Position numbers and translations under genes: made by a program. Shown piece after piece: positions 2,564 to 7,586 of a DNA stretch of 64,000 nucleotides (within the stretch, counting starts at the first letter, position 1; each line of letters begins with the position of its first letter). The notes beneath the pieces were generated by a model. That model saw only the letters and a list, made by a program, of their open reading frames with translations. It did not search any database and was not told the origin of the DNA. The stretch spans positions 124,001-188,000 of the IMG/VR virus record IMGVR_UViG_3300031997_000001; one strand, 5' to 3'.

Positions 2564-2872
2564 ATGTCGTTGGAAACTGAACTGGCAACGCTTACCGAAG
2601 CGTCCAGGAATCTTGCGTCGACAGTTAACTCCGTCGCAGCGTCGACGCGTGCCGATCACGATGAGCTTGTGACCTATAAAGAGAGGTTCAACACCCTTGA
2701 AAACAAAGTTAAAGAAATAGTCCGGCATCATGAAGACGAACAGACTGCTAAATCGCAACGTCGCCTTGATGCCGTAAGGGAAAAGCGCTCCGCATCGTTG
2801 CAAATAAACTTAGCCGCCGTTGGTATCATCGTTTCCATTGTATTAGCTCTTTTGGCCTTGTTTTGGAAGTGA
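2564..2872 (+). CDS. Coiled-coil protein with C-terminal TM helix (holin/XhlA-like)
   Basis: SD AGGGG; heptad N-terminus; LAAVGIIVSIVLALLALFWK tail. Confidence 0.6.
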   Translation: MSLETELATLTEASRNLASTVNSVAASTRADHDELVTYKERFNTLENKVKEIVRHHEDEQTAKSQRRLDAVREKRSASLQINLAAVGIIVSIVLALLALFWK

Positions 2873-2879
2873 GTTCACC

Positions 2880-3338
2880 ATGTGCCAGGTCCTCATTCTC
2901 TCGCAGGACATTGACTTCAGCTCTACAGCCTTCTCGAGGCTGAGAGGAGCTGGCCACACCGTGAAGATCGTAGGCGCCGACCTGGATGTCCTGTTCGAAC
3001 TAGGTGCCCTGGACTCGCCTTTCGAATGCGTCATCATCGACGAGAAGGCAGGCGGACTAAAGGTAGTGCAGAGCATCCGGAGCCACGATAGTACGACAGG
3101 GATCATAATTGCATCGGAAGACGACTCTGAAGCTGCTGCAAAGCCGTACGCCGGCCTGGACGTCTGGAGCGTCGTCCATCGTAAGGAGTACGGCCTTCTG
3201 GTCGAGAAGGTTCAAAAGGCCTGCTCCATGGCGTCCATGAGCGCCACGCACTTCTTTAAGGTCAAGACGGCGGTCTCTGAAGCGGCGAAGTCTATCATGG
3301 ATGCGCAGGCCAAATTCTGCCAACACCACGCCACATGA
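2880..3338 (+). CDS. Response-regulator receiver-like protein
   Basis: VLILSQD...FECVIIDE..GGLKVVQSIR...IIIAS CheY-like pattern. Confidence 0.55.
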   Translation: MCQVLILSQDIDFSSTAFSRLRGAGHTVKIVGADLDVLFELGALDSPFECVIIDEKAGGLKVVQSIRSHDSTTGIIIASEDDSEAAAKPYAGLDVWSVVHRKEYGLLVEKVQKACSMASMSATHFFKVKTAVSEAAKSIMDAQAKFCQHHAT

Positions 3339-3577
3339 GCTATCCGATTTACGAACTGATGATCCGCCGCGGTCGGGAAGTGGGCGTATTCGGCGTCGGG
3401 CTGGTGCCGATGCAGAATGCGGACCCAGATCCCCAGACGTTTAGGCATCAATACTATTACAACACGCGCGAGAACATCCTCTACAAGAAGACGCAAGGTA
3501 ACGGAGGCGTTCCGTTCTGGAAGCGAACTTCGACTCCGGCATGCGCTCCGCCAGCCAGGTCCATTCCGCCGAGGTAA
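3335..3577 (+). CDS. Hypothetical protein
   Basis: ATGA overlap with upstream gene. Confidence 0.6.
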   Translation: MSYPIYELMIRRGREVGVFGVGLVPMQNADPDPQTFRHQYYYNTRENILYKKTQGNGGVPFWKRTSTPACAPPARSIPPR

Positions 3578-3579
3578 CC

Positions 3580-3813
3580 GTGCCCAGCGTATTCGTGTAC
3601 TGCCGCGGAGACATAAAAGAGTTCCAGTGGCCAGCGAGCAAGACAATTGGCGAAGCAGCTGTGGAGGCATCGAAAGCGTTTGATTATGCGCGTCCGCCGG
3701 ACATTCCACATTTTCAAGATCTCGAAGATCTCGTCCTCCAGCAATCCGATACCTTTACAAAGCTAGGGACCAGGGATGGGGATAGCTTCTTGCTCATAGC
3801 ACTTTTCTCATAG
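3580..3813 (+). CDS. Ubiquitin-like (beta-grasp) protein
   Basis: GTG after GAGGT; KTIGE...LVLQQSDTFTKLGTRDGDSFLLI resembles the Ubl TLxxxGIxDGxxLxL pattern; no terminal GG. Confidence 0.5.
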   Translation: MPSVFVYCRGDIKEFQWPASKTIGEAAVEASKAFDYARPPDIPHFQDLEDLVLQQSDTFTKLGTRDGDSFLLIALFS

Positions 3814-3837
3814 CAATTGGCGGCAGTATCTAAATAC

Positions 3838-3866
3838 TTGACAAACCGGATACCCTGTGGTATAAT
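3838..3866 (+). promoter_or_regulatory. Consensus sigma70 promoter with extended -10
   Basis: TTGACA(3838-43)-17 nt-TATAAT(3861-66), TGG before -10. Confidence 0.9.
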
Positions 3867-3892
3867 TGCGTGTGAAAGGAGGGAAAGAGGGA

Positions 3893-4092
3893 GTAGGGAA
3901 ATGCCGGTCCTGACGATTCCTCACAGACGTGTCCCGTATGTGAGGGGAGAAAAGCGAAGATTAAGTATCTGCACGTTCAGTGCAGTAGTTCCGGCGGGTG
4001 TCCGGCAAGTAGCCCGTGCAAGCGGGAACTCTCAGCGTGAGAGAACACCACTCCGTCGTCGTCTGTCATCGTCAGGATCGACATCTCCCTAC
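3893..4092 (+). ncRNA. Putative structured RNA / 5' leader (~200 nt)
   Basis: 25-bp closing stem 3893-3917/4068-4092 enclosing several hairpins including a GCAA tetraloop; directly downstream of promoter. Confidence 0.6.
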
Positions 4093-4140
4093 ACGCCGTC
4101 CAAAGCAGGCAAGCGTTCAACCACCAGAAGGGAGGGGCGT

Positions 4141-4539
4141 ATGACCTAGGTTGCCACCCATTTCTACGTCATCGTCCGGACCGACATCTCACTCCCTCAG
4201 CAGATCGTCCAGGCTGTCCACGCCGCCCATGACGCAGGCCGTGTAGTATCCTCTGATGGACGCTTTTCCACCGTCGTCTGCCAGGTCCCTTCCGAACAAC
4301 ACCTGCTCCACGAGTACGATCGTATCACCTCCAGGGGTATTCGGTGCTTCCTGTTCAGGGAGCCAGACATGGGCGGTCAGGCAACGGCCCTGGCTACCGA
4401 ACCCACCGCCAATAGGAAGTTCTTTTCCCGGTTTCACCTTTGGAAAGGAGACAACCATGTTGTAGGCAAGAGGACCGCCGTTGCTTGTCCCGACAACTTG
4501 TCCGTTTCCACGTCCTCAGTTATTGGAGACAAGCAATGA
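4141..4539 (+). CDS. pth2: Peptidyl-tRNA hydrolase, Pth2 family, with in-frame TAG at codon 3
   Basis: SD GGAGGGG, ATG ACC TAG, then 129 open codons: FYVIVRTDISLPQQIVQAVHAA...CFLFREPDMGGQATALAT; absent from ORF track. Confidence 0.8.
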
Positions 4540-4817
4540 TTCTCACCACCGAGCAGTGGGATGCCGTCCAGGCGATGAAGGCGGAGATCAAGGGCCTGGC
4601 CGAGACCCAGAAGAAGGAGAAGGCCATCCTGCGGACCCCGCATTTGAACATCCGCGTGCCTGATGGAAAGGGTGGCTTTTACGGTCCCTGGCACTTCCAG
4701 TGGGAGACCCACAAGAGGGCCAGGCTGATCACGGAGCACCTGATTGAGTACAATAAGGCACGCGGGAAGGACTTCTCCATGTACCTGGGGAAGCAGAAGG
4801 CGGAGGCAAATGGTTGA
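4536..4817 (+). CDS. Hypothetical protein
   Basis: SD GGAG; ATGA overlap with pth2 stop; MILTTEQWDAVQAMKAEIKGLA. Confidence 0.75.
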   Translation: MILTTEQWDAVQAMKAEIKGLAETQKKEKAILRTPHLNIRVPDGKGGFYGPWHFQWETHKRARLITEHLIEYNKARGKDFSMYLGKQKAEANG

Positions 4818-4843
4818 CCCCGATAGTACCTCCGTAGTATAAT
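4814..4843 (+). promoter_or_regulatory. sigma70-like promoter for tRNA
   Basis: TTGACC-18 nt-TATAAT. Confidence 0.75.
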
Positions 4844-4849
4844 GTGGTT

Positions 4850-4870
4850 GCGGGACCGGCGTCCCGCTTT
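4850..4870 (+). terminator. GC hairpin + TTT immediately 5' of tRNA
   Basis: GCGGGAC-CGGC-GTCCCGC-TTT. Confidence 0.45.
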
Positions 4871-4944
4871 GCACCCATAGCACAATGGTAGTGCTGCGAA
4901 CTCTAAATTCGCGAATGAGGGTTCAATTCCCTCTGGGTGCACCA
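4871..4944 (+). tRNA. Amber suppressor tRNA (anticodon CUA)
   Basis: Cloverleaf GCACCCA/TGGGTGC, D GCAC/GTGC, anticodon arm GCGAA-CT CTA AA-TTCGC, T arm GAGGG-TTCAATT-CCCTC, encoded ACCA. Confidence 0.95.
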
Positions 4945-4968
4945 CTTTGAGGATACCTTGGAGGCCCG

Positions 4969-6891
4969 ATGTCTGATCTGATCCCGAAGGACAAAAAGCA
5001 AGCGGAACAACTGCCCCCGGACGGGCCGCTGATCGAACTTGGCCAGTGGTATTGGATCGATGACAATGACGACAAGGGAATCCTGCGCAAGAAGAGCTTC
5101 TTCGCTTGCGTGACCAAGATCGGGTCCAACTTCATCGAATGTCATAATCCCTTTGGTTCGTATACCCGCATCCATCTGGACAAGCTTTTGGATGAGTGTA
5201 GGTTGGAGCCTGAGCCCGAGAAGATCATCCGCGAACAGATGATGAAGTACCGAAGGGAAGTCCAGGAGAAGCTCGGCGAGATCAAGAACATCATGGCCAG
5301 GCTCGGACTTACGGAACTCCCCAAGCTCGGACACAATGCCCAGCCCCAGGAAACGAGCAAGGCTCTCTCCGTCATCGCGGCCTCAGAGGACGTGAACCAG
5401 TACAAGAAGAAGCTTATCGAGGCCAAGGAGAAGGATCTCCCCGCGCTGTTCGAGGAAGTGAAGGAGGCCAACGAGAAACTGGCCACTTGGATGCAGGCCC
5501 AGGCGCTTCCCATGGAGGCGGCGTCCGAAGAGCTGGAAGAGCGCCTGGGCCAGATCGACGACCGCATCTTCAACGTCTCGCTCTATGCCGGACTGACCGA
5601 GGACGTCAAGCAGGTCTCGGACGGGAAGCCGGCAGACAGCACGGATAGGCTTCACATCCTCCAGCGCCTCCTCTACATGGACGAGGAGTGCCTGCTGGAT
5701 TACAAGCACGGCGGCATGGAATTCAGCAATATCAAGAAATTCGATGCCTGGCTGGCCAAGCCCGGCAACCGCGACCGTGTCCTACCGTTCCCCAGGTCCA
5801 TCGTCGCCTTCCGCGTGCGCCGCGACGAGAAGGAACGCGATTATGATGGAAGCCTTGCCCAGGCCATGATCATCTTCGATCTGAAGGAGCTTGACAAGCT
5901 GACGTTCCTTTACATCCGGAATGGCGAGCGGCTCTACCGGATGAACTGCGACCTGGAATTCGGCAATCTGATCTTCCCCGGCCAGCACGAGCTCAATCTT
6001 TCCGAGCCCATGATGGCGAAGATGTTTTGCAGCCGGGTCAATGAAATCATCCCCAAGAGGGAGTTCGAAGACCTCGTCGTGAGGGAAAAGGAAAGGGTCG
6101 TCAAGGAGAAGGAGTGGAGGAAAGTAAATCCTGGTAAGAGCTGGATAGAGAATCCGTTTCACGAGTGGAGCGATAAGACCAGAGACTTTGAGCCCTTTGA
6201 CAAGACGAGCGTCTATTTCGATGAGATGAGCGCGGAGGTAGCCAAACGGATCAAGCAGTACAACCGGATCGCCGTCATCGTCCAGGGCCTGTTCGACCGT
6301 TCTGAGGTCCTGCATCCGCACCCGCCCGTCCAGCTATGGTCGCCGGGTGGCTTCGCTGCTGCCGTCGAGCTCGTTTATGACGGATCCAACACCCTGCATT
6401 ATGGAGACGCTCCGGACTTCGAGGCCTATCGTCTCGAGTGCAATAAGACCTTAAAGGAAGGCTCGATCGTCGTCGGCCAGCATGGCTATTGGCTGAATAA
6501 GGAAGTGGAGAGGGAACAGAATAGGCAGGAGAATAACTGGCGGTATAAGAACCCGCACGTGTCCGCGGCGTGGTATAAGCCCCCGGGGAATCCGGGTCCT
6601 GGCTATGTGGCTAAGGTGGCTTACTGGTTCCCCAAGAAGCGTCTCGCCGTGTTCAGGTGGATGCGCGAGCGGCAGGCGTTTGGGCGATATAATGATGGCG
6701 AGCTGATCCCCACTTCTGTTGCGGTGCCGGACACTCACCTGTTCAATGTGAGCGCCTATAAGCCCGGAGACTATAAGCAGTTCTTCATCGATCCGAGGAC
6801 ACGCGCTCAATACCTGAAATGGGCACGCATGCTGCTGGCTGCTGAGGATTACTTCTCAGGGCACATTAAAGTCGGGGAAGCTCCAGAATGA
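4969..6891 (+). CDS. Large hypothetical phage protein with N-terminal coiled coil
   Basis: 640 aa, SD GGAGG. Confidence 0.8.
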   Translation: MSDLIPKDKKQAEQLPPDGPLIELGQWYWIDDNDDKGILRKKSFFACVTKIGSNFIECHNPFGSYTRIHLDKLLDECRLEPEPEKIIREQMMKYRREVQEKLGEIKNIMARLGLTELPKLGHNAQPQETSKALSVIAASEDVNQYKKKLIEAKEKDLPALFEEVKEANEKLATWMQAQALPMEAASEELEERLGQIDDRIFNVSLYAGLTEDVKQVSDGKPADSTDRLHILQRLLYMDEECLLDYKHGGMEFSNIKKFDAWLAKPGNRDRVLPFPRSIVAFRVRRDEKERDYDGSLAQAMIIFDLKELDKLTFLYIRNGERLYRMNCDLEFGNLIFPGQHELNLSEPMMAKMFCSRVNEIIPKREFEDLVVREKERVVKEKEWRKVNPGKSWIENPFHEWSDKTRDFEPFDKTSVYFDEMSAEVAKRIKQYNRIAVIVQGLFDRSEVLHPHPPVQLWSPGGFAAAVELVYDGSNTLHYGDAPDFEAYRLECNKTLKEGSIVVGQHGYWLNKEVEREQNRQENNWRYKNPHVSAAWYKPPGNPGPGYVAKVAYWFPKKRLAVFRWMRERQAFGRYNDGELIPTSVAVPDTHLFNVSAYKPGDYKQFFIDPRTRAQYLKWARMLLAAEDYFSGHIKVGEAPE

Positions 6892-7586
6892 ATACAAGAC
6901 TCCCGCCGAACGACAAGTTCCCGCGGATCCGCCACTTACCATGGAGCCCCGGCGTCTCGAAGGACGACCTGGTCGGGGATTCGTTCTTCTTCCTCGACTC
7001 CCCAATAGCCTGTACCATCAGTGAGAAGATGGACGGCAGTAACGTAGCGCTCACGCGTGATGCCGTCTTCGCACGGACACACGCCCATCCGCCGACTCAT
7101 TCGTCTTTCAATGCACTCAAGGCGCTCCATGTCTCCATCAGACACTGCATACCAGAGGGGTTCACCGTCTTTGCCGAATGGTGTTGGGCGGTGCATTCCC
7201 TGGTCTACAAGAAGCTGCCCAATCCGCCTCTCTTTCTGATAGGCGTACGATCAGAGGTGGCGTCCTGGTCGAGCCAGCTCGAGCCCGGCACCTGGTTGGA
7301 TGTGCCTCGCTGCAAAGAAGTTGCTGAGCAGATCGGCATTCCGATGGTGCCTATTATCTGGCAGGGCCAGCTTCTCGCGCCGCGCGACACGATGGACGGA
7401 CTTCAGAACACGCTCAATTATCCGCCAGCTTATGGGCCGGAGCGCGAGGGATTCGTCATTCGGTACAGCGGGACCATACGGGATGCCGACTGGGACAAGC
7501 TCGTCGCCAAGTGGGTCCGTGCAGGTCACGTCACCACGGACGAACATTGGACAGTCAATGCAGTCAAGAGGCAGAGGACAGCATGA
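6888..7586 (+). CDS. ATP-dependent RNA ligase family protein
   Basis: Motifs SEKMDGSN, FAEW, REGFVIR, AKWVRAGH. Confidence 0.8.
   Translation: MNTRLPPNDKFPRIRHLPWSPGVSKDDLVGDSFFFLDSPIACTISEKMDGSNVALTRDAVFARTHAHPPTHSSFNALKALHVSIRHCIPEGFTVFAEWCWAVHSLVYKKLPNPPLFLIGVRSEVASWSSQLEPGTWLDVPRCKEVAEQIGIPMVPIIWQGQLLAPRDTMDGLQNTLNYPPAYGPEREGFVIRYSGTIRDADWDKLVAKWVRAGHVTTDEHWTVNAVKRQRTA

What the first reader, a model, noticed from the sequence alone, without database searches (positions are those of the whole stretch)
4130..4944. Amber-gated peptidyl-tRNA hydrolase encoded next to its own amber-suppressor tRNA
Seen: a strong SD (GGAGGGG) precedes ATG-ACC-TAG at 4141. The frame stays open for 129 more codons with Pth2-type motifs (YVIVRTD..QQIVQAVHAA; FREPD.GGQATAL) and ends in an ATGA overlap with the next gene. 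No ATG/GTG/TTG follows the TAG until codon 77, so full-length Pth2 needs UAG readthrough. About 330 nt further on lies an intact tRNA with anticodon CUA and its own promoter. TAG is an ordinary stop elsewhere in the window, so this is not genome-wide recoding. Established: two-codon minigenes (lambda bar) cause peptidyl-tRNA drop-off that Pth must clear, and prfB uses an internal stop as a release-factor sensor. Inference: a phage translational switch in which suppressor-tRNA versus RF1 competition sets Pth2 output, making the hydrolase only when termination at UAG is weak.
Basis: partly seen in the sequence, partly recalled or inferred. Interest (0 to 1): 0.93.

Follow-up and report, generated by a model that had tools for sequence, protein, structure and literature searches.

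The report
Suppressor-tRNA-gated phage translation switch
A giant phage carries a small cassette whose two proteins apparently can be made only when the phage's own stop-codon-reading tRNA is working; the same switch is conserved in dozens of phages, some of them cultured, and gives these puzzling tRNAs their first clear targets.

Summary
SD + ATG ACC TAG (4141-4149) is followed in frame by a 129-codon Pth2-fold ORF with no usable start. A tRNA-CUA with its own promoter lies 332 nt further on.

It is not an error, a pseudogene or genome-wide recoding. Of 68 distinct relatives, 59 have an ATG-led in-frame stop 1-8 codons into the ORF: 57 TAG and 2 TGA. TAG gates sit beside tRNA-CUA. Both TGA gates sit beside tRNA-UCA, after two independent switches. 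The window itself ends 38 of 118 predicted genes with TAG.

Right after the Pth2-like domain lies a second amber-gated mini-ORF, ATG TTG TAG GCA AGA GGA CCG CCG. If read through, it encodes R-G-P-P, the strongest known bacterial ribosome-arrest motif. Its Pro codons form the 5' arm of a hairpin that buries the SD and ATG of a conserved 93-aa gene.

Best model: suppressor activity turns on the Pth2-like protein directly, and turns on p93 through an arrest leader. The purpose of the switch and the amino acid inserted are unknown. Cultured phages (GAP32, Serratia BF, Acinetobacter ME3, Ralstonia RsoM2USA) carry the Pth2 gate, mis-annotated or unannotated. I found no published description.

The parts
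3838..3866 (+). Sigma-70-type promoter (TTGACA-17-TATAAT with TG) for the cassette mRNA. It leaves a leader of about 270 nt before the gate.
   Evidence: 12 of 12 consensus matches. This is a consensus match only; no transcript data.
4130..4137 (+). Shine-Dalgarno sequence (GGGAGGGG) of the gated ORF
   Evidence: An equivalent SD lies upstream of the ATG in nearly all relatives.
4141..4149 (+). Gate 1: ATG ACC TAG. The start codon, one Thr codon and an in-frame amber codon, followed by G.
   Evidence: Conserved in 57 of 59 ATG-led gated relatives as TAG, and as TGA in 2. The codon before the gate is Thr in 35 of 59, using all four ACN codons. The next base is a purine in 55 of 59.
4150..4539 (+). 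Pth2-fold ORF with no start codon of its own. The domain is about 4150-4449. The C-terminal 29 codons are a clade-specific extension that runs over the leader and hairpin in another frame and ends in ATGA.
4444..4450 (+). Shine-Dalgarno sequence (AAAGGAG) of the leader mini-ORF. It lies inside the conserved LWKG codons of the Pth2-like gene.
4457..4480 (+). Gate 2, the arrest leader: ATG TTG TAG GCA AGA GGA CCG CCG. Read through, it gives M-L-(amber)-A-R-G-P-P.
   Evidence: It is the only such motif in all six frames of the 64-kb window. It is present at the same place in about 25 distinct loci, with synonymous codon variation. It carries TGA in L016, which has a tRNA-UCA.
4479..4538 (+). Predicted hairpin. 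The 5' arm (4479-4493) lies just 3' of the Pro codons. The 3' arm (4523-4538) contains the SD GGAG (4524-4527) and the ATG (4536) of p93.
   Evidence: minimum-free-energy and centroid structures; in 16 of 22 loci at least 4 of 5 SD-core bases pair with the Pro-Pro-codon region.
4536..4817 (+). p93: a conserved 93-aa helical protein of unknown function, the gene controlled by the leader.
   Evidence: the family is found downstream of the Pth2-like gene in about 40 distinct loci. There is no Pfam or PDB match. The AF2 model has pLDDT 77 and gives no Foldseek hit.
4814..4843 (+). Sigma-70-type promoter of the tRNA (TTGACC-18-TATAAT). Its -35 box overlaps the p93 stop codon.
4871..4944 (+). Amber-suppressor tRNA: anticodon CUA, loop CU-CUA-AA, G1-C72, A73, CCA encoded.
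   Evidence: A sister assembly (L003) differs by compensatory T-stem changes.

Best explanation
This is a conserved phage cassette in which a phage-encoded suppressor tRNA acts as a translational ON signal for two neighbouring genes.

(1) Ribosomes start at ATG 4141 and meet UAG at codon 3. Without the suppressor they release a dipeptide. With charged tRNA-CUA they read on and make the full Pth2-fold protein, which has no other start.

(2) Ribosomes also start on the leader at 4457. Only if its UAG (codon 3) is decoded do they translate A-R-G-P-P. R-G-P-P is an EF-P-resistant arrest motif. The ribosome then stalls with the two Pro codons (4475-4480) in the P and A sites.

(3) The stalled ribosome covers the 5' arm of a hairpin (4479-4493). 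This frees the SD and ATG of p93 (4523-4538), so p93 is translated, in the manner of ErmCL or SecM. In this phage, ribosomes finishing the extended Pth2 ORF at the ATGA overlap would do the same.

What is shown: the sequence anatomy, its conservation, and the covariation of stop codon with anticodon.
What is inferred: readthrough, arrest and hairpin opening.

The purpose is inference only. Production of a peptidyl-tRNA hydrolase-like protein and p93 is coupled to the moment and degree of suppression. This would serve either to clear by-products of suppression or arrest (dropped-off short peptidyl-tRNAs), or to feed back on suppressor activity.
For: - Gate conservation: 59 of 68 distinct relatives carry an ATG-led in-frame stop 3-24 codons before the first beta-strand. 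No canonical start lies between them in most cases.
- The gate is ancestral to a 57-member clade (support 99/93) whose members are only 30-50% identical. It was lost only in XacN1 (a fusion) and RaK2.
- Covariation: 37-40 TAG gates have a tRNA-CUA in the same locus. Both TGA gates (L016, L025; separate subclades) have a tRNA-UCA. There are no mismatches.
- L016 also carries TGA in its leader.
- No TAG occurs inside any Pth2 domain.
- Standard code: the window uses TAG as the stop of 38 of 118 genes. Only two ATG-led gates exist in 64 kb.
- Leader: R-(G/S/A)-P-P is conserved, with CGN/AGR, TCN/AGC and all Gly and Pro codons in use. Variants are D-P-P and G-P-stop.
- RGPP is the strongest, EF-P-refractory arrest motif and the most avoided tetrapeptide in bacterial proteomes (PMC12992588).
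- Hairpin: SD sequestration is predicted in the window and in 16 of 22 loci.
- The second gene is made suppressor-dependent in three different ways. These are the arrest leader, a direct M-x-TAG gate (L061/62/65/67 clade), and overlap with the gated Pth2 stop (L007, L011, L014, L053).
- Complete cultured genomes that carry the gate all carry a CUA suppressor: GAP32, BF, ME3 and RsoM2USA.
Against: - There are no expression, proteomic or ribosome-profiling data. All mechanistic steps are inferred from sequence.
- RAPP-type arrest normally also needs an N-terminal adjacent segment (PMC12992588). Here the nascent chain is only 7-14 residues, so arrest might be weak, or might resolve by peptidyl-tRNA drop-off.
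- The hairpin is not significant on its own (z = -1.4). The per-locus shuffle controls are individually weak.
- The phage ends 32% of its genes with TAG, and some lie in frame with the next gene. A strong general suppressor would therefore be costly, and the model does not explain how this is avoided.
- Seven TAG-gated loci with at least 1.5 kb of flank on each side show no suppressor tRNA in the stretch held.
- A basic residue of the canonical Pth2 'GK..Q..HA' motif is Gln in this family (alignment). Hydrolase activity is therefore not assured.
Confidence: 0.7

Rival explanations
1. bar-like minigenes. On this view the SD-ATG-NNN-TAG units are chiefly two-codon minigenes. Their translation makes peptidyl-tRNA drop off and sequesters host tRNAs, as a shut-off device. 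The Pth2-like enzyme would be the phage's remedy, and the suppressor tRNA is secondary.
For: - 32 of 59 gates have exactly two sense codons, behind a strong SD.
- The leader is ATG TTG TAG in many loci.
- The units lie next to a Pth-fold gene.
- From memory: lambda bar minigenes are toxic when Pth is limiting.
Against: - The stop is always in frame with a conserved ORF that has no start of its own.
- The pre-gate length ranges from 1 to 8 codons.
- The stop identity covaries with the neighbouring tRNA anticodon.
- The peptide after the leader stop is conserved at the amino-acid level, which makes sense only if it is translated.
Confidence: 0.12
2. The tiny upstream ORF only positions ribosomes. 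After terminating at TAG they reinitiate on a non-canonical codon, or a non-canonical start is used directly, without any need for the tRNA.
For: - Short uORF-coupled reinitiation exists in bacteria.
- In a few loci a GTG, TTG or ATG lies just after the stop (for example L061 and L067, TAG ATG on the second gene).
Against: - In the window and in most relatives no ATG, GTG or TTG lies between the stop and the first beta-strand. The codons there are not conserved.
- It does not explain the TAG/CUA and TGA/UCA covariation or the adjacency.
- It does not explain the conserved R-G-P-P after the second stop.
Confidence: 0.07
3. The phage is a stop-codon-recoded (code 15) phage, and the Pth2-like gene is just one of many genes with TAG sense codons.
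For: - It encodes a suppressor tRNA, as recoded phages do (10.1101/2021.08.26.457843).
- Some gene callers translated homologues with TAG as Q.
Against: - 38 of 118 predicted genes in the window end in TAG. Every TAG that had coding signal on both sides is followed by the SD and ATG of the next gene.
- Only two ATG-led TAG gates exist in 64 kb.
- In 68 relatives TAG never occurs inside the domain, only in the N-terminal tail.
- Cultured carriers (GAP32, BF, ME3, RsoM2USA) are annotated in standard code.
- Only 27% of the 235-kb contig was seen, so recoding elsewhere in it is not excluded.
Confidence: 0.05
4. An RF1 sensor analogous to prfB. The early UAG would measure host RF1 activity, with near-cognate readthrough when RF1 is low. 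The phage tRNA would be incidental.
For: - An early in-frame stop acting as a sensor has a precedent in prfB (from memory).
- Competition with RF1 necessarily sets the readthrough fraction.
Against: - The tight linkage and anticodon covariation with a dedicated tRNA.
- TGA gates would be sensing RF2 rather than RF1.
- No frameshift site is present.
Confidence: 0.05
5. A fresh nonsense mutation, a pseudogene or a sequencing error.
For: A single-base change can create a TAG.
Against: - The TAG is identical in four independent assemblies.
- It is conserved across 57 diverged relatives while the flanking codons vary.
Confidence: 0.01

Closest known systems
Stop-codon-recoded phages (TAG->Gln code 15, TGA->Trp code 4) with phage suppressor tRNAs (Ivanova 2014; Borges et al., 10.1101/2021.08.26.457843; Peters et al., PMC9523058)
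   Same: A phage-encoded suppressor tRNA is needed to translate phage ORFs that contain in-frame stops. Those authors proposed that this delays expression until the tRNA is made. TAG and TGA versions both exist.
   Different: Here the genome otherwise uses TAG as a normal and frequent stop. Only two ORFs are gated. The stop sits at a fixed place in an unconserved N-terminal tail, next to the tRNA. The gated genes belong to translation housekeeping, not lysis or structure. One gate feeds an arrest peptide.
RAPP/RGPP-type ribosome arrest peptides (ApdA, ApdP, ApcA, SecM RAGP; PMC12992588, PMC10951233, PMC7897499)
   Same: An R-(A/G/S)-P-P core at the end of a small ORF directly upstream of the regulated gene. 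RGPP and RSPP are experimentally arrest-prone. The downstream SD is buried in a structure that a stalled ribosome would open.
   Different: Entry into the arrest motif is conditional on decoding a stop codon. The peptide is far shorter (7-14 residues) and has no secretion signal. The presumed input is suppressor activity rather than Sec/YidC activity. It is found in phages.
ermC / ermB leader-peptide translational attenuation
   Same: A ribosome stalled on a short leader melts a hairpin that hides the SD of the next gene.
   Different: The trigger here is a tRNA that reads a stop, not an antibiotic.
E. coli prfB (RF2) autoregulation
   Same: An early in-frame stop makes output depend on the balance between termination and an alternative decoding event.
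   Different: In prfB the bypass is a +1 frameshift and the product is the release factor itself. Here the bypass is a dedicated suppressor tRNA, and no feedback has been demonstrated.
Lambda bar minigenes and host Pth
   Same: SD + AUG + one sense codon + stop, with a functional link to peptidyl-tRNA hydrolase.
   Different: bar minigenes are free-standing, use the rare AUA codon and act through drop-off toxicity. Here the stop continues in frame into a conserved protein or peptide, and it covaries with a tRNA.
Synthetic suppressor-tRNA feed-forward gene circuits (PMC7969014; PMC13276491)
   Same: The same logic: a gene with an early amber codon is expressed only when a co-regulated suppressor tRNA is present.
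   Different: Those circuits are engineered. This one appears to be a natural, widespread counterpart.

Membership tests
PTH2 peptidyl-tRNA hydrolase family (PF01981) | Sequence match to the family model | tested here: met
   The single sequence scores 21 bits, E 4e-4, just below the cut-off of 23. A profile of 24 relatives hits solved Pth2 chains: 24bt_A at 1e-8, and also 2zv3, 1rzw, 1wn2, 1rlk and 1q7s. Some relatives carry precomputed PF01981 hits.
PTH2 peptidyl-tRNA hydrolase family (PF01981) | Pth2 alpha/beta fold | tested here: met
   The AF2 model has pLDDT 93.5 and pTM 0.86. Foldseek finds 2zv3, 3erj, 1q7s, 1wn2 and 1xty at probability 1.00 with TM 0.72-0.80.
PTH2 peptidyl-tRNA hydrolase family (PF01981) | Active-site residues (from memory: a Lys in the GK..Q..HA motif and an Asp in the D-x-G..T motif of S. 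solfataricus Pth2) | tested here: inconclusive
   The Q21, H24, A25, D73, T79 and A80 columns are invariant or nearly so. The column aligned to the Lys of 24bt_A ('GKK.VQ') is Gln in this family (alignment). The paper that defines the residues is not held.
PTH2 peptidyl-tRNA hydrolase family (PF01981) | Hydrolysis of peptidyl-tRNA | not testable with these tools
   This needs an enzyme assay or pth(ts) complementation.
Stop-codon-recoded (code 15 / code 4) phages | Phage-encoded suppressor tRNA | tested here: met
   tRNA-CUA at 4871-4944.
Stop-codon-recoded (code 15 / code 4) phages | The reassigned stop occurs as a sense codon throughout many genes and is not used as a stop there | tested here: not met
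   38 of 118 genes end in TAG, followed by the next gene's SD and ATG. Only two ATG-led gates occur in 64 kb. Only 27% of the contig was examined.
RAPP-like ribosome arrest peptides | C-terminal core R-(A/G/S)-P-P | tested here: met
   R-G-P-P at 4469-4480. About 25 distinct loci have RGPP, RSPP or RAPP with synonymous codon variation.
RAPP-like ribosome arrest peptides | Small ORF directly upstream of the regulated gene, with an expression platform that responds to stalling | tested here: met
   The leader lies 56-160 nt upstream of p93-family genes. A hairpin pairs the Pro-codon region with the p93 SD in the window and in 16 of 22 loci. This is an in-silico result only.
RAPP-like ribosome arrest peptides | An N-terminal adjacent segment that supports arrest; arrest demonstrated | not testable with these tools
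   Only 4-11 residues precede the core. Toeprinting or peptidyl-tRNA detection is needed.
Lambda bar-type minigenes | Free-standing SD + AUG + one sense codon + stop whose expression is toxic when Pth is limiting | tested here: not met
   The units are not free-standing. The stop is in frame with a conserved startless ORF or peptide. The pre-gate length is 1-8 codons and codon 2 is mostly Thr. Toxicity was not testable.
prfB-type programmed recoding | An in-frame stop bypassed by a +1 frameshift at a slippery site, stimulated by an internal SD | tested here: not met
   The ORF continues in the zero frame straight after the stop. No frameshift is needed.

The most novel reading that the evidence does not exclude
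The cassette is a self-contained natural sensor of decoding state. A phage suppressor tRNA is the signal. An N-terminal stop-codon gate and a stop-gated R-G-P-P arrest peptide are two independent sensors of that signal. A Pth2-fold enzyme and the unknown p93 protein are the effectors, which either clean up after suppression or hold it at a set point. This would give the 'orphan' suppressor tRNAs of standard-code jumbo phages their first targets. It may also represent the seed stage from which genome-wide recoding evolves. A stop-codon-conditional arrest peptide would be a new class of translational regulator.
Probability: 0.45. Interest if true: 0.92.

Novelty: new variant of a known kind. Interest (0 to 1): 0.88.

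Why it matters
1. Suppressor tRNAs in standard-code phages are a recognised puzzle. [quoted passage not shown] The Summit genome note says the same (PMC9022506). This cassette supplies concrete, conserved targets.
2. It would be a natural translational switch that uses a tRNA as the inducer. It would also be the first arrest peptide whose engagement depends on reading a stop codon. That links two well-studied fields, recoding and nascent-chain arrest.
3. It fixes annotation. The gene is missing or N-terminally truncated in GenBank records of GAP32, BF, ME3 and RsoM2USA. In protein databases it appears either truncated or with a spurious Gln.
4. It is directly testable in cultured phages and in E. 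coli K-12 reporters.
5. It offers compact parts for synthetic biology.
6. It may show how a phage lives with a suppressor while a third of its own genes end in TAG.

Tried and rejected
- Genome-wide recoding. A crude comparison of ORF coverage under alternative codes was uninformative at this G+C content. A GC3-based test and a self-trained gene model then showed that TAG is an ordinary stop.
- 'TAG = Gln' from homologues. Rejected: the Q in database proteins is a translation artefact. The contigs read TAG, and the tool reports 'translates_to_query: no'.
- Initiator-tRNA reading of UAG as a start. Rejected: the tRNAs have G1-C72 and lack three G-C pairs next to the anticodon loop. The ATG, not the TAG, sits at SD spacing.
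- tRNA isotype or ancestry. There was no E. coli match. The only phage matches are other suppressor, His or Leu tRNAs. The inserted amino acid stays unknown. The two tRNA-UCA resemble tRNA-Trp by eye only.
- p93 function. No Pfam, PHROG or PDB sequence match, and no structural match.
- An RNA motif instead of a peptide for the leader. Rejected because of synonymous codon variation. Rfam finds nothing but the tRNA in 3600-5200.
It worked with the narrower alignment A4.
- The paper defining Pth2 active-site residues is not held.
- L019/L020/L028/L069/L070 (an outgroup subfamily) have an upstream TGA and no clear start. I left them unresolved.
Full report
**1. The observation**

The sequence reads exactly as described. 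GGGAGGGG (4130-4137) is followed by ATG ACC TAG (4141-4149). An open frame of 129 codons runs to TGA 4537-4539, overlapping the ATG (4536) of the next gene. The first ATG/GTG/TTG after the TAG is at 4369, codon 77.

ARAGORN finds a single tRNA in the 64-kb window, at 4871-4944 with anticodon CUA and an encoded CCA. Rfam scores it 70.4 bits. A TTGACC-18-TATAAT promoter lies at 4814-4843. A perfect TTGACA-17-TATAAT promoter lies at 3838-3866, upstream of the gated ORF.

As the operators required, only the piece after the stop (4150-4536) was used in protein searches.

**2. What the ORF encodes**

Alone, the protein gives a sub-threshold Pfam PTH2 hit of 21 bits against a cut-off of 23, and matches phrog_1866. 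A profile of 24 relatives matches solved Pth2 enzymes: 24bt_A at E 1e-8, and also 2zv3, 1rzw, 1wn2 and human Bit1 1q7s. An AlphaFold model built on that alignment has pLDDT 93.5. It superposes on Pth2 structures with TM 0.72-0.80.

The fold and family are therefore Pth2. One caveat applies. In the HMMER alignment, the basic residue of the canonical 'GK..Q..HA' motif is Gln in this family. From memory, a Lys there is catalytic in the archaeal enzyme. Activity is therefore plausible but not assured.

**3. The stop is a conserved gate, not damage and not recoding**

The nearest database homologues looked either N-terminally truncated or began 'MTQ...'. Their contigs show why. Each carries ATG-NNN-TAG, and the 'Q' is a gene caller's translation of TAG; the tool reports 'translates_to_query: no'. 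So no homologue supplies a sense codon at the gate, and the amino acid inserted is unknown.

I collected loci from three sources:
- 26 IMG/VR loci;
- 51 metagenome loci;
- 8 contigs from GTDB genomes.

At 90% identity these give 68 distinct Pth2-like genes. Of these, 59 have an ATG followed by 0-7 further sense codons and an in-frame stop, just before the first beta-strand. The details are:
- 57 gates are TAG and 2 are TGA.
- 32 gates have exactly two sense codons before the stop.
- The codon before the stop is Thr in 35, using all four ACN codons.
- The base after the stop is a purine in 55.

From memory, a purine at that position is a context known to favour suppression.

A strict pattern scan over 515 kb of these loci found 30 TAG gates. 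Of them, 29 were this gene and one was its downstream neighbour. TGA gave 4 chance hits and TAA gave 2.

A maximum-likelihood tree places the gate at the base of a 57-member clade (support 99/93). Members of this clade share only 30-50% identity. The gate was lost only in XacN1, where the domain is fused to a longer ORF, and in RaK2. No relative has a TAG inside the domain.

**4. Link to the tRNA**

Among TAG-gated genes, 37 (plus 3 with weaker SDs) have a tRNA-CUA in the same locus. It usually lies 100-450 nt upstream or about 700-880 nt downstream. Eight more are on contigs too short to tell.

The two TGA-gated genes, L016 and L025, lie in separate subclades. Each has a tRNA-UCA instead. L016 also carries TGA in its second gate. 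There are no mismatched pairs. Ignoring phylogeny, the chance of that is about 1 in 861; taken as two independent switches it is still striking.

The window's tRNA and that of a sister assembly differ by compensatory T-stem changes.

**5. The genome is standard code**

A self-trained gene model gives 118 genes with stops TGA 53, TAG 38 and TAA 27. Every TAG that had coding signal on both sides is followed within about 25 nt by the SD and ATG of the next gene. Only two SD+ATG+x+TAG gates exist in the 64 kb, at 4147 and 4463.

Cultured jumbo phages with ordinary annotation carry the same gate:
- Cronobacter phage GAP32 has ATG GCA CAA TAG. The CDS GAP32_397 is annotated N-truncated, and a 'Sup-tRNA' with anticodon CUA lies 3.1 kb downstream.
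- Serratia phage BF has ATG ACG CAC TAG. The gene is unannotated, and a tRNA-CUA lies 3.5 kb downstream.
- Acinetobacter phage ME3 has ATG ACT TAG, with a tRNA-CUA about 430 nt upstream.
- Ralstonia phage RsoM2USA has ATG TTG TAG. The gene is unannotated. Its paper reports one CUA suppressor among 44 tRNAs.

**6.

Immediately after the conserved LWKG end of the domain comes a strong SD and then ATG TTG TAG GCA AGA GGA CCG CCG (4457-4480). It lies in a different frame from the Pth2 ORF.

The pattern is Met + 1-8 codons + stop + 1-6 codons + R-(G/S/A)-P-P. It occurs once in all six frames of the window. It occurs at the same place in about 25 distinct loci, with no hits elsewhere in them except one inside a tRNA. 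Arg is encoded by CGN or AGR, Ser by TCN or AGC, and Gly and Pro by all four codons each. Selection therefore acts on the peptide. Variant leaders end in D-P-P or in G-P-stop.

RGPP is reported as the strongest and most context-tolerant arrest core. It is refractory to EF-P and is the most avoided tetrapeptide in bacterial proteomes. RSPP is also arrest-prone (PMC12992588).

**7. The expression platform**

The Pro-Pro codons are often CCUCC, which resembles an anti-SD sequence. Together with the next 10-15 nt they pair with the SD and start of the following gene.

In the window, 4479-4493 pairs with 4523-4538. That 3' arm contains GGAG (4524-4527) and the ATG (4536). In 16 of 22 loci, at least 4 of 5 SD-core bases pair with this region in the minimum-free-energy fold. 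Individually these predictions are weak: the window hairpin has z = -1.4. Their recurrence in unrelated sequences is the argument.

A ribosome terminating at the leader UAG would reach only to about 4475. One stalled with CCG 4475-4477 in the P site would cover the 5' arm.

**8. The regulated gene**

The gene downstream (4536-4817, 'p93') belongs to a family found after the Pth2-like gene in about 40 distinct loci. It has no Pfam, PHROG, PDB-sequence or Foldseek match. Its model is a helical hairpin with pLDDT 77.

Other lineages make the second gene suppressor-dependent in other ways:
- In the L061/62/65/67 clade, a different small gene family carries a direct M-x-TAG gate.
- In L007, L011, L014 and L053, the p93 start overlaps the stop of the gated Pth2 gene.

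Three routes to the same dependency argue that the dependency itself is what is selected.

**9. Mechanism and purpose**

The best-supported reading is a suppressor-tRNA-dependent switch with a direct gate on the Pth2-like protein and an arrest-leader gate on p93.

- Shown: the anatomy, the conservation and the covariation.
- Inferred: readthrough, arrest and hairpin melting.

The purpose is open. One option is clean-up of the short peptidyl-tRNAs that suppression and arrest on very short ORFs should generate. The other is feedback on suppressor activity.

A real difficulty remains. The phage ends a third of its genes in TAG, and some of these lie in frame with the next gene. Suppression must therefore be weak, transient or context-specific. 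The conserved Thr-UAG-purine context and the position at codon 3 may be what makes these two sites specially suppressible.

**10. Novelty**

Five full-text searches found no description of a gated Pth2, a stop-gated arrest peptide or this cassette. Published work on recoded phages proposes timing control through in-frame stops. Genome papers on standard-code phages state that the targets of their suppressor tRNAs are unknown.

I rate this a new variant of known kinds (phage suppressor-tRNA-dependent translation, and RAPP-type arrest attenuation). The combination is new and unusually testable.

Noticed in passing
window 4457-4538; same position in L001, L002, L005, L006, L008-L010, L013, L015-L017, L033, L036, L039, L042, L043, L045, L048, L049, L051, L054, L057, L080, L094: A second stop-gated mini-ORF encodes R-(G/S/A)-P-P after the stop. 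Its Pro codons pair with the SD of the next gene. This looks like an arrest leader that fires only on suppression.
   Followed up: yes
window 4536-4817: p93 is a conserved small helical protein family of unknown function. It lies downstream of the Pth2-like gene in about 40 distinct loci and matches nothing known.
   Followed up: partly
L061 about 4326-4336, L062 925, L065, L067 (just after the Pth2-like stop): In one clade the second gene belongs to a different family (motif RWGYYPC ... W.RW..K.PHNR). It carries its own direct M-x-TAG gate in place of the arrest leader. L025 (TGA type) has a relative of it.
   Followed up: partly
L083/L085 (GAP32, record about 290135), L086 (Serratia BF, locus about 4990), L087 (ME3, about 4981), L088 (RsoM2USA, about 4990): Cultured jumbo phages carry the gated gene. 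GenBank either omits it or annotates an N-truncated CDS (GAP32_397, ME3_195). Yersinia fHe-Yen9-03/04, the Erwinia pEa_SNUABM phages and Pectobacterium CBB also matched, but I did not read them.
   Followed up: partly
P0003, P0004, P0007, P0009 versus L080, L081: Protein-database entries for this family begin 'MTQ...' because a gene caller translated TAG as Gln. Other entries are truncated at an internal TTG or CTG. Either way the gate is hidden from protein-level searches.
   Followed up: yes
window 4450-4539: In this phage and its close relatives the Pth2 ORF lacks the usual stop after LWKG. It runs 29 further codons across the leader and hairpin in another frame and ends in the ATGA overlap with p93. 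Pth2-translating ribosomes would therefore also open the hairpin.
   Followed up: partly
window, whole (for example 25711, 27911, 34946, 50775, 54903 on the minus strand): TAG is the stop of 38 of 118 predicted genes despite the resident amber suppressor. It often occurs as TAGGAGG, overlapping the next gene's SD. Several TAG-terminated genes are in frame with the next gene, so readthrough would make fusions of 100-520 residues.
   Followed up: partly
window 3838-4140: A perfect sigma-70 promoter with an extended -10 is followed by an untranslated leader of about 270 nt before the gate. In many relatives the tRNA-CUA occupies this position instead. Rfam finds nothing here.
   Followed up: no
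window 6888-7586 (+): This ORF matches PHROG 'RNA ligase' (phrog_24030, E 7e-26), 2 kb from the tRNA. It may be tRNA-repair related.
   Followed up: no
L019 about 5959-6010, L020 about 5968-6010: These outgroup Pth2-like genes have no canonical start before the conserved strand. Each has an out-of-frame ATG + 5 codons + TAA mini-ORF overlapping the beginning. How they start is unexplained.
   Followed up: no
L093 (contig CAWIDK010000005.1, 1.64 Mb, Gemmataceae MAG), gate near 2990, tRNA-CUA 3823-3895: The gated cassette also lies inside a megabase-scale planctomycete contig. It may be a prophage or a chromosomal copy. L092 and L096 are also binned as Gemmataceae.
   Followed up: no
L009 4978 / L037 (inside the tRNA-CUA gene): A second match to the 'stop + SRGPP' pattern falls within the tRNA gene itself. 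It is probably coincidence, but I did not examine it.
   Followed up: no
window 2663-3432: This is the only nucleotide-level similarity to a deposited phage: 68% identity to a hypothetical gene of Mesorhizobium phage Cp1R7A-A1.
   Followed up: no
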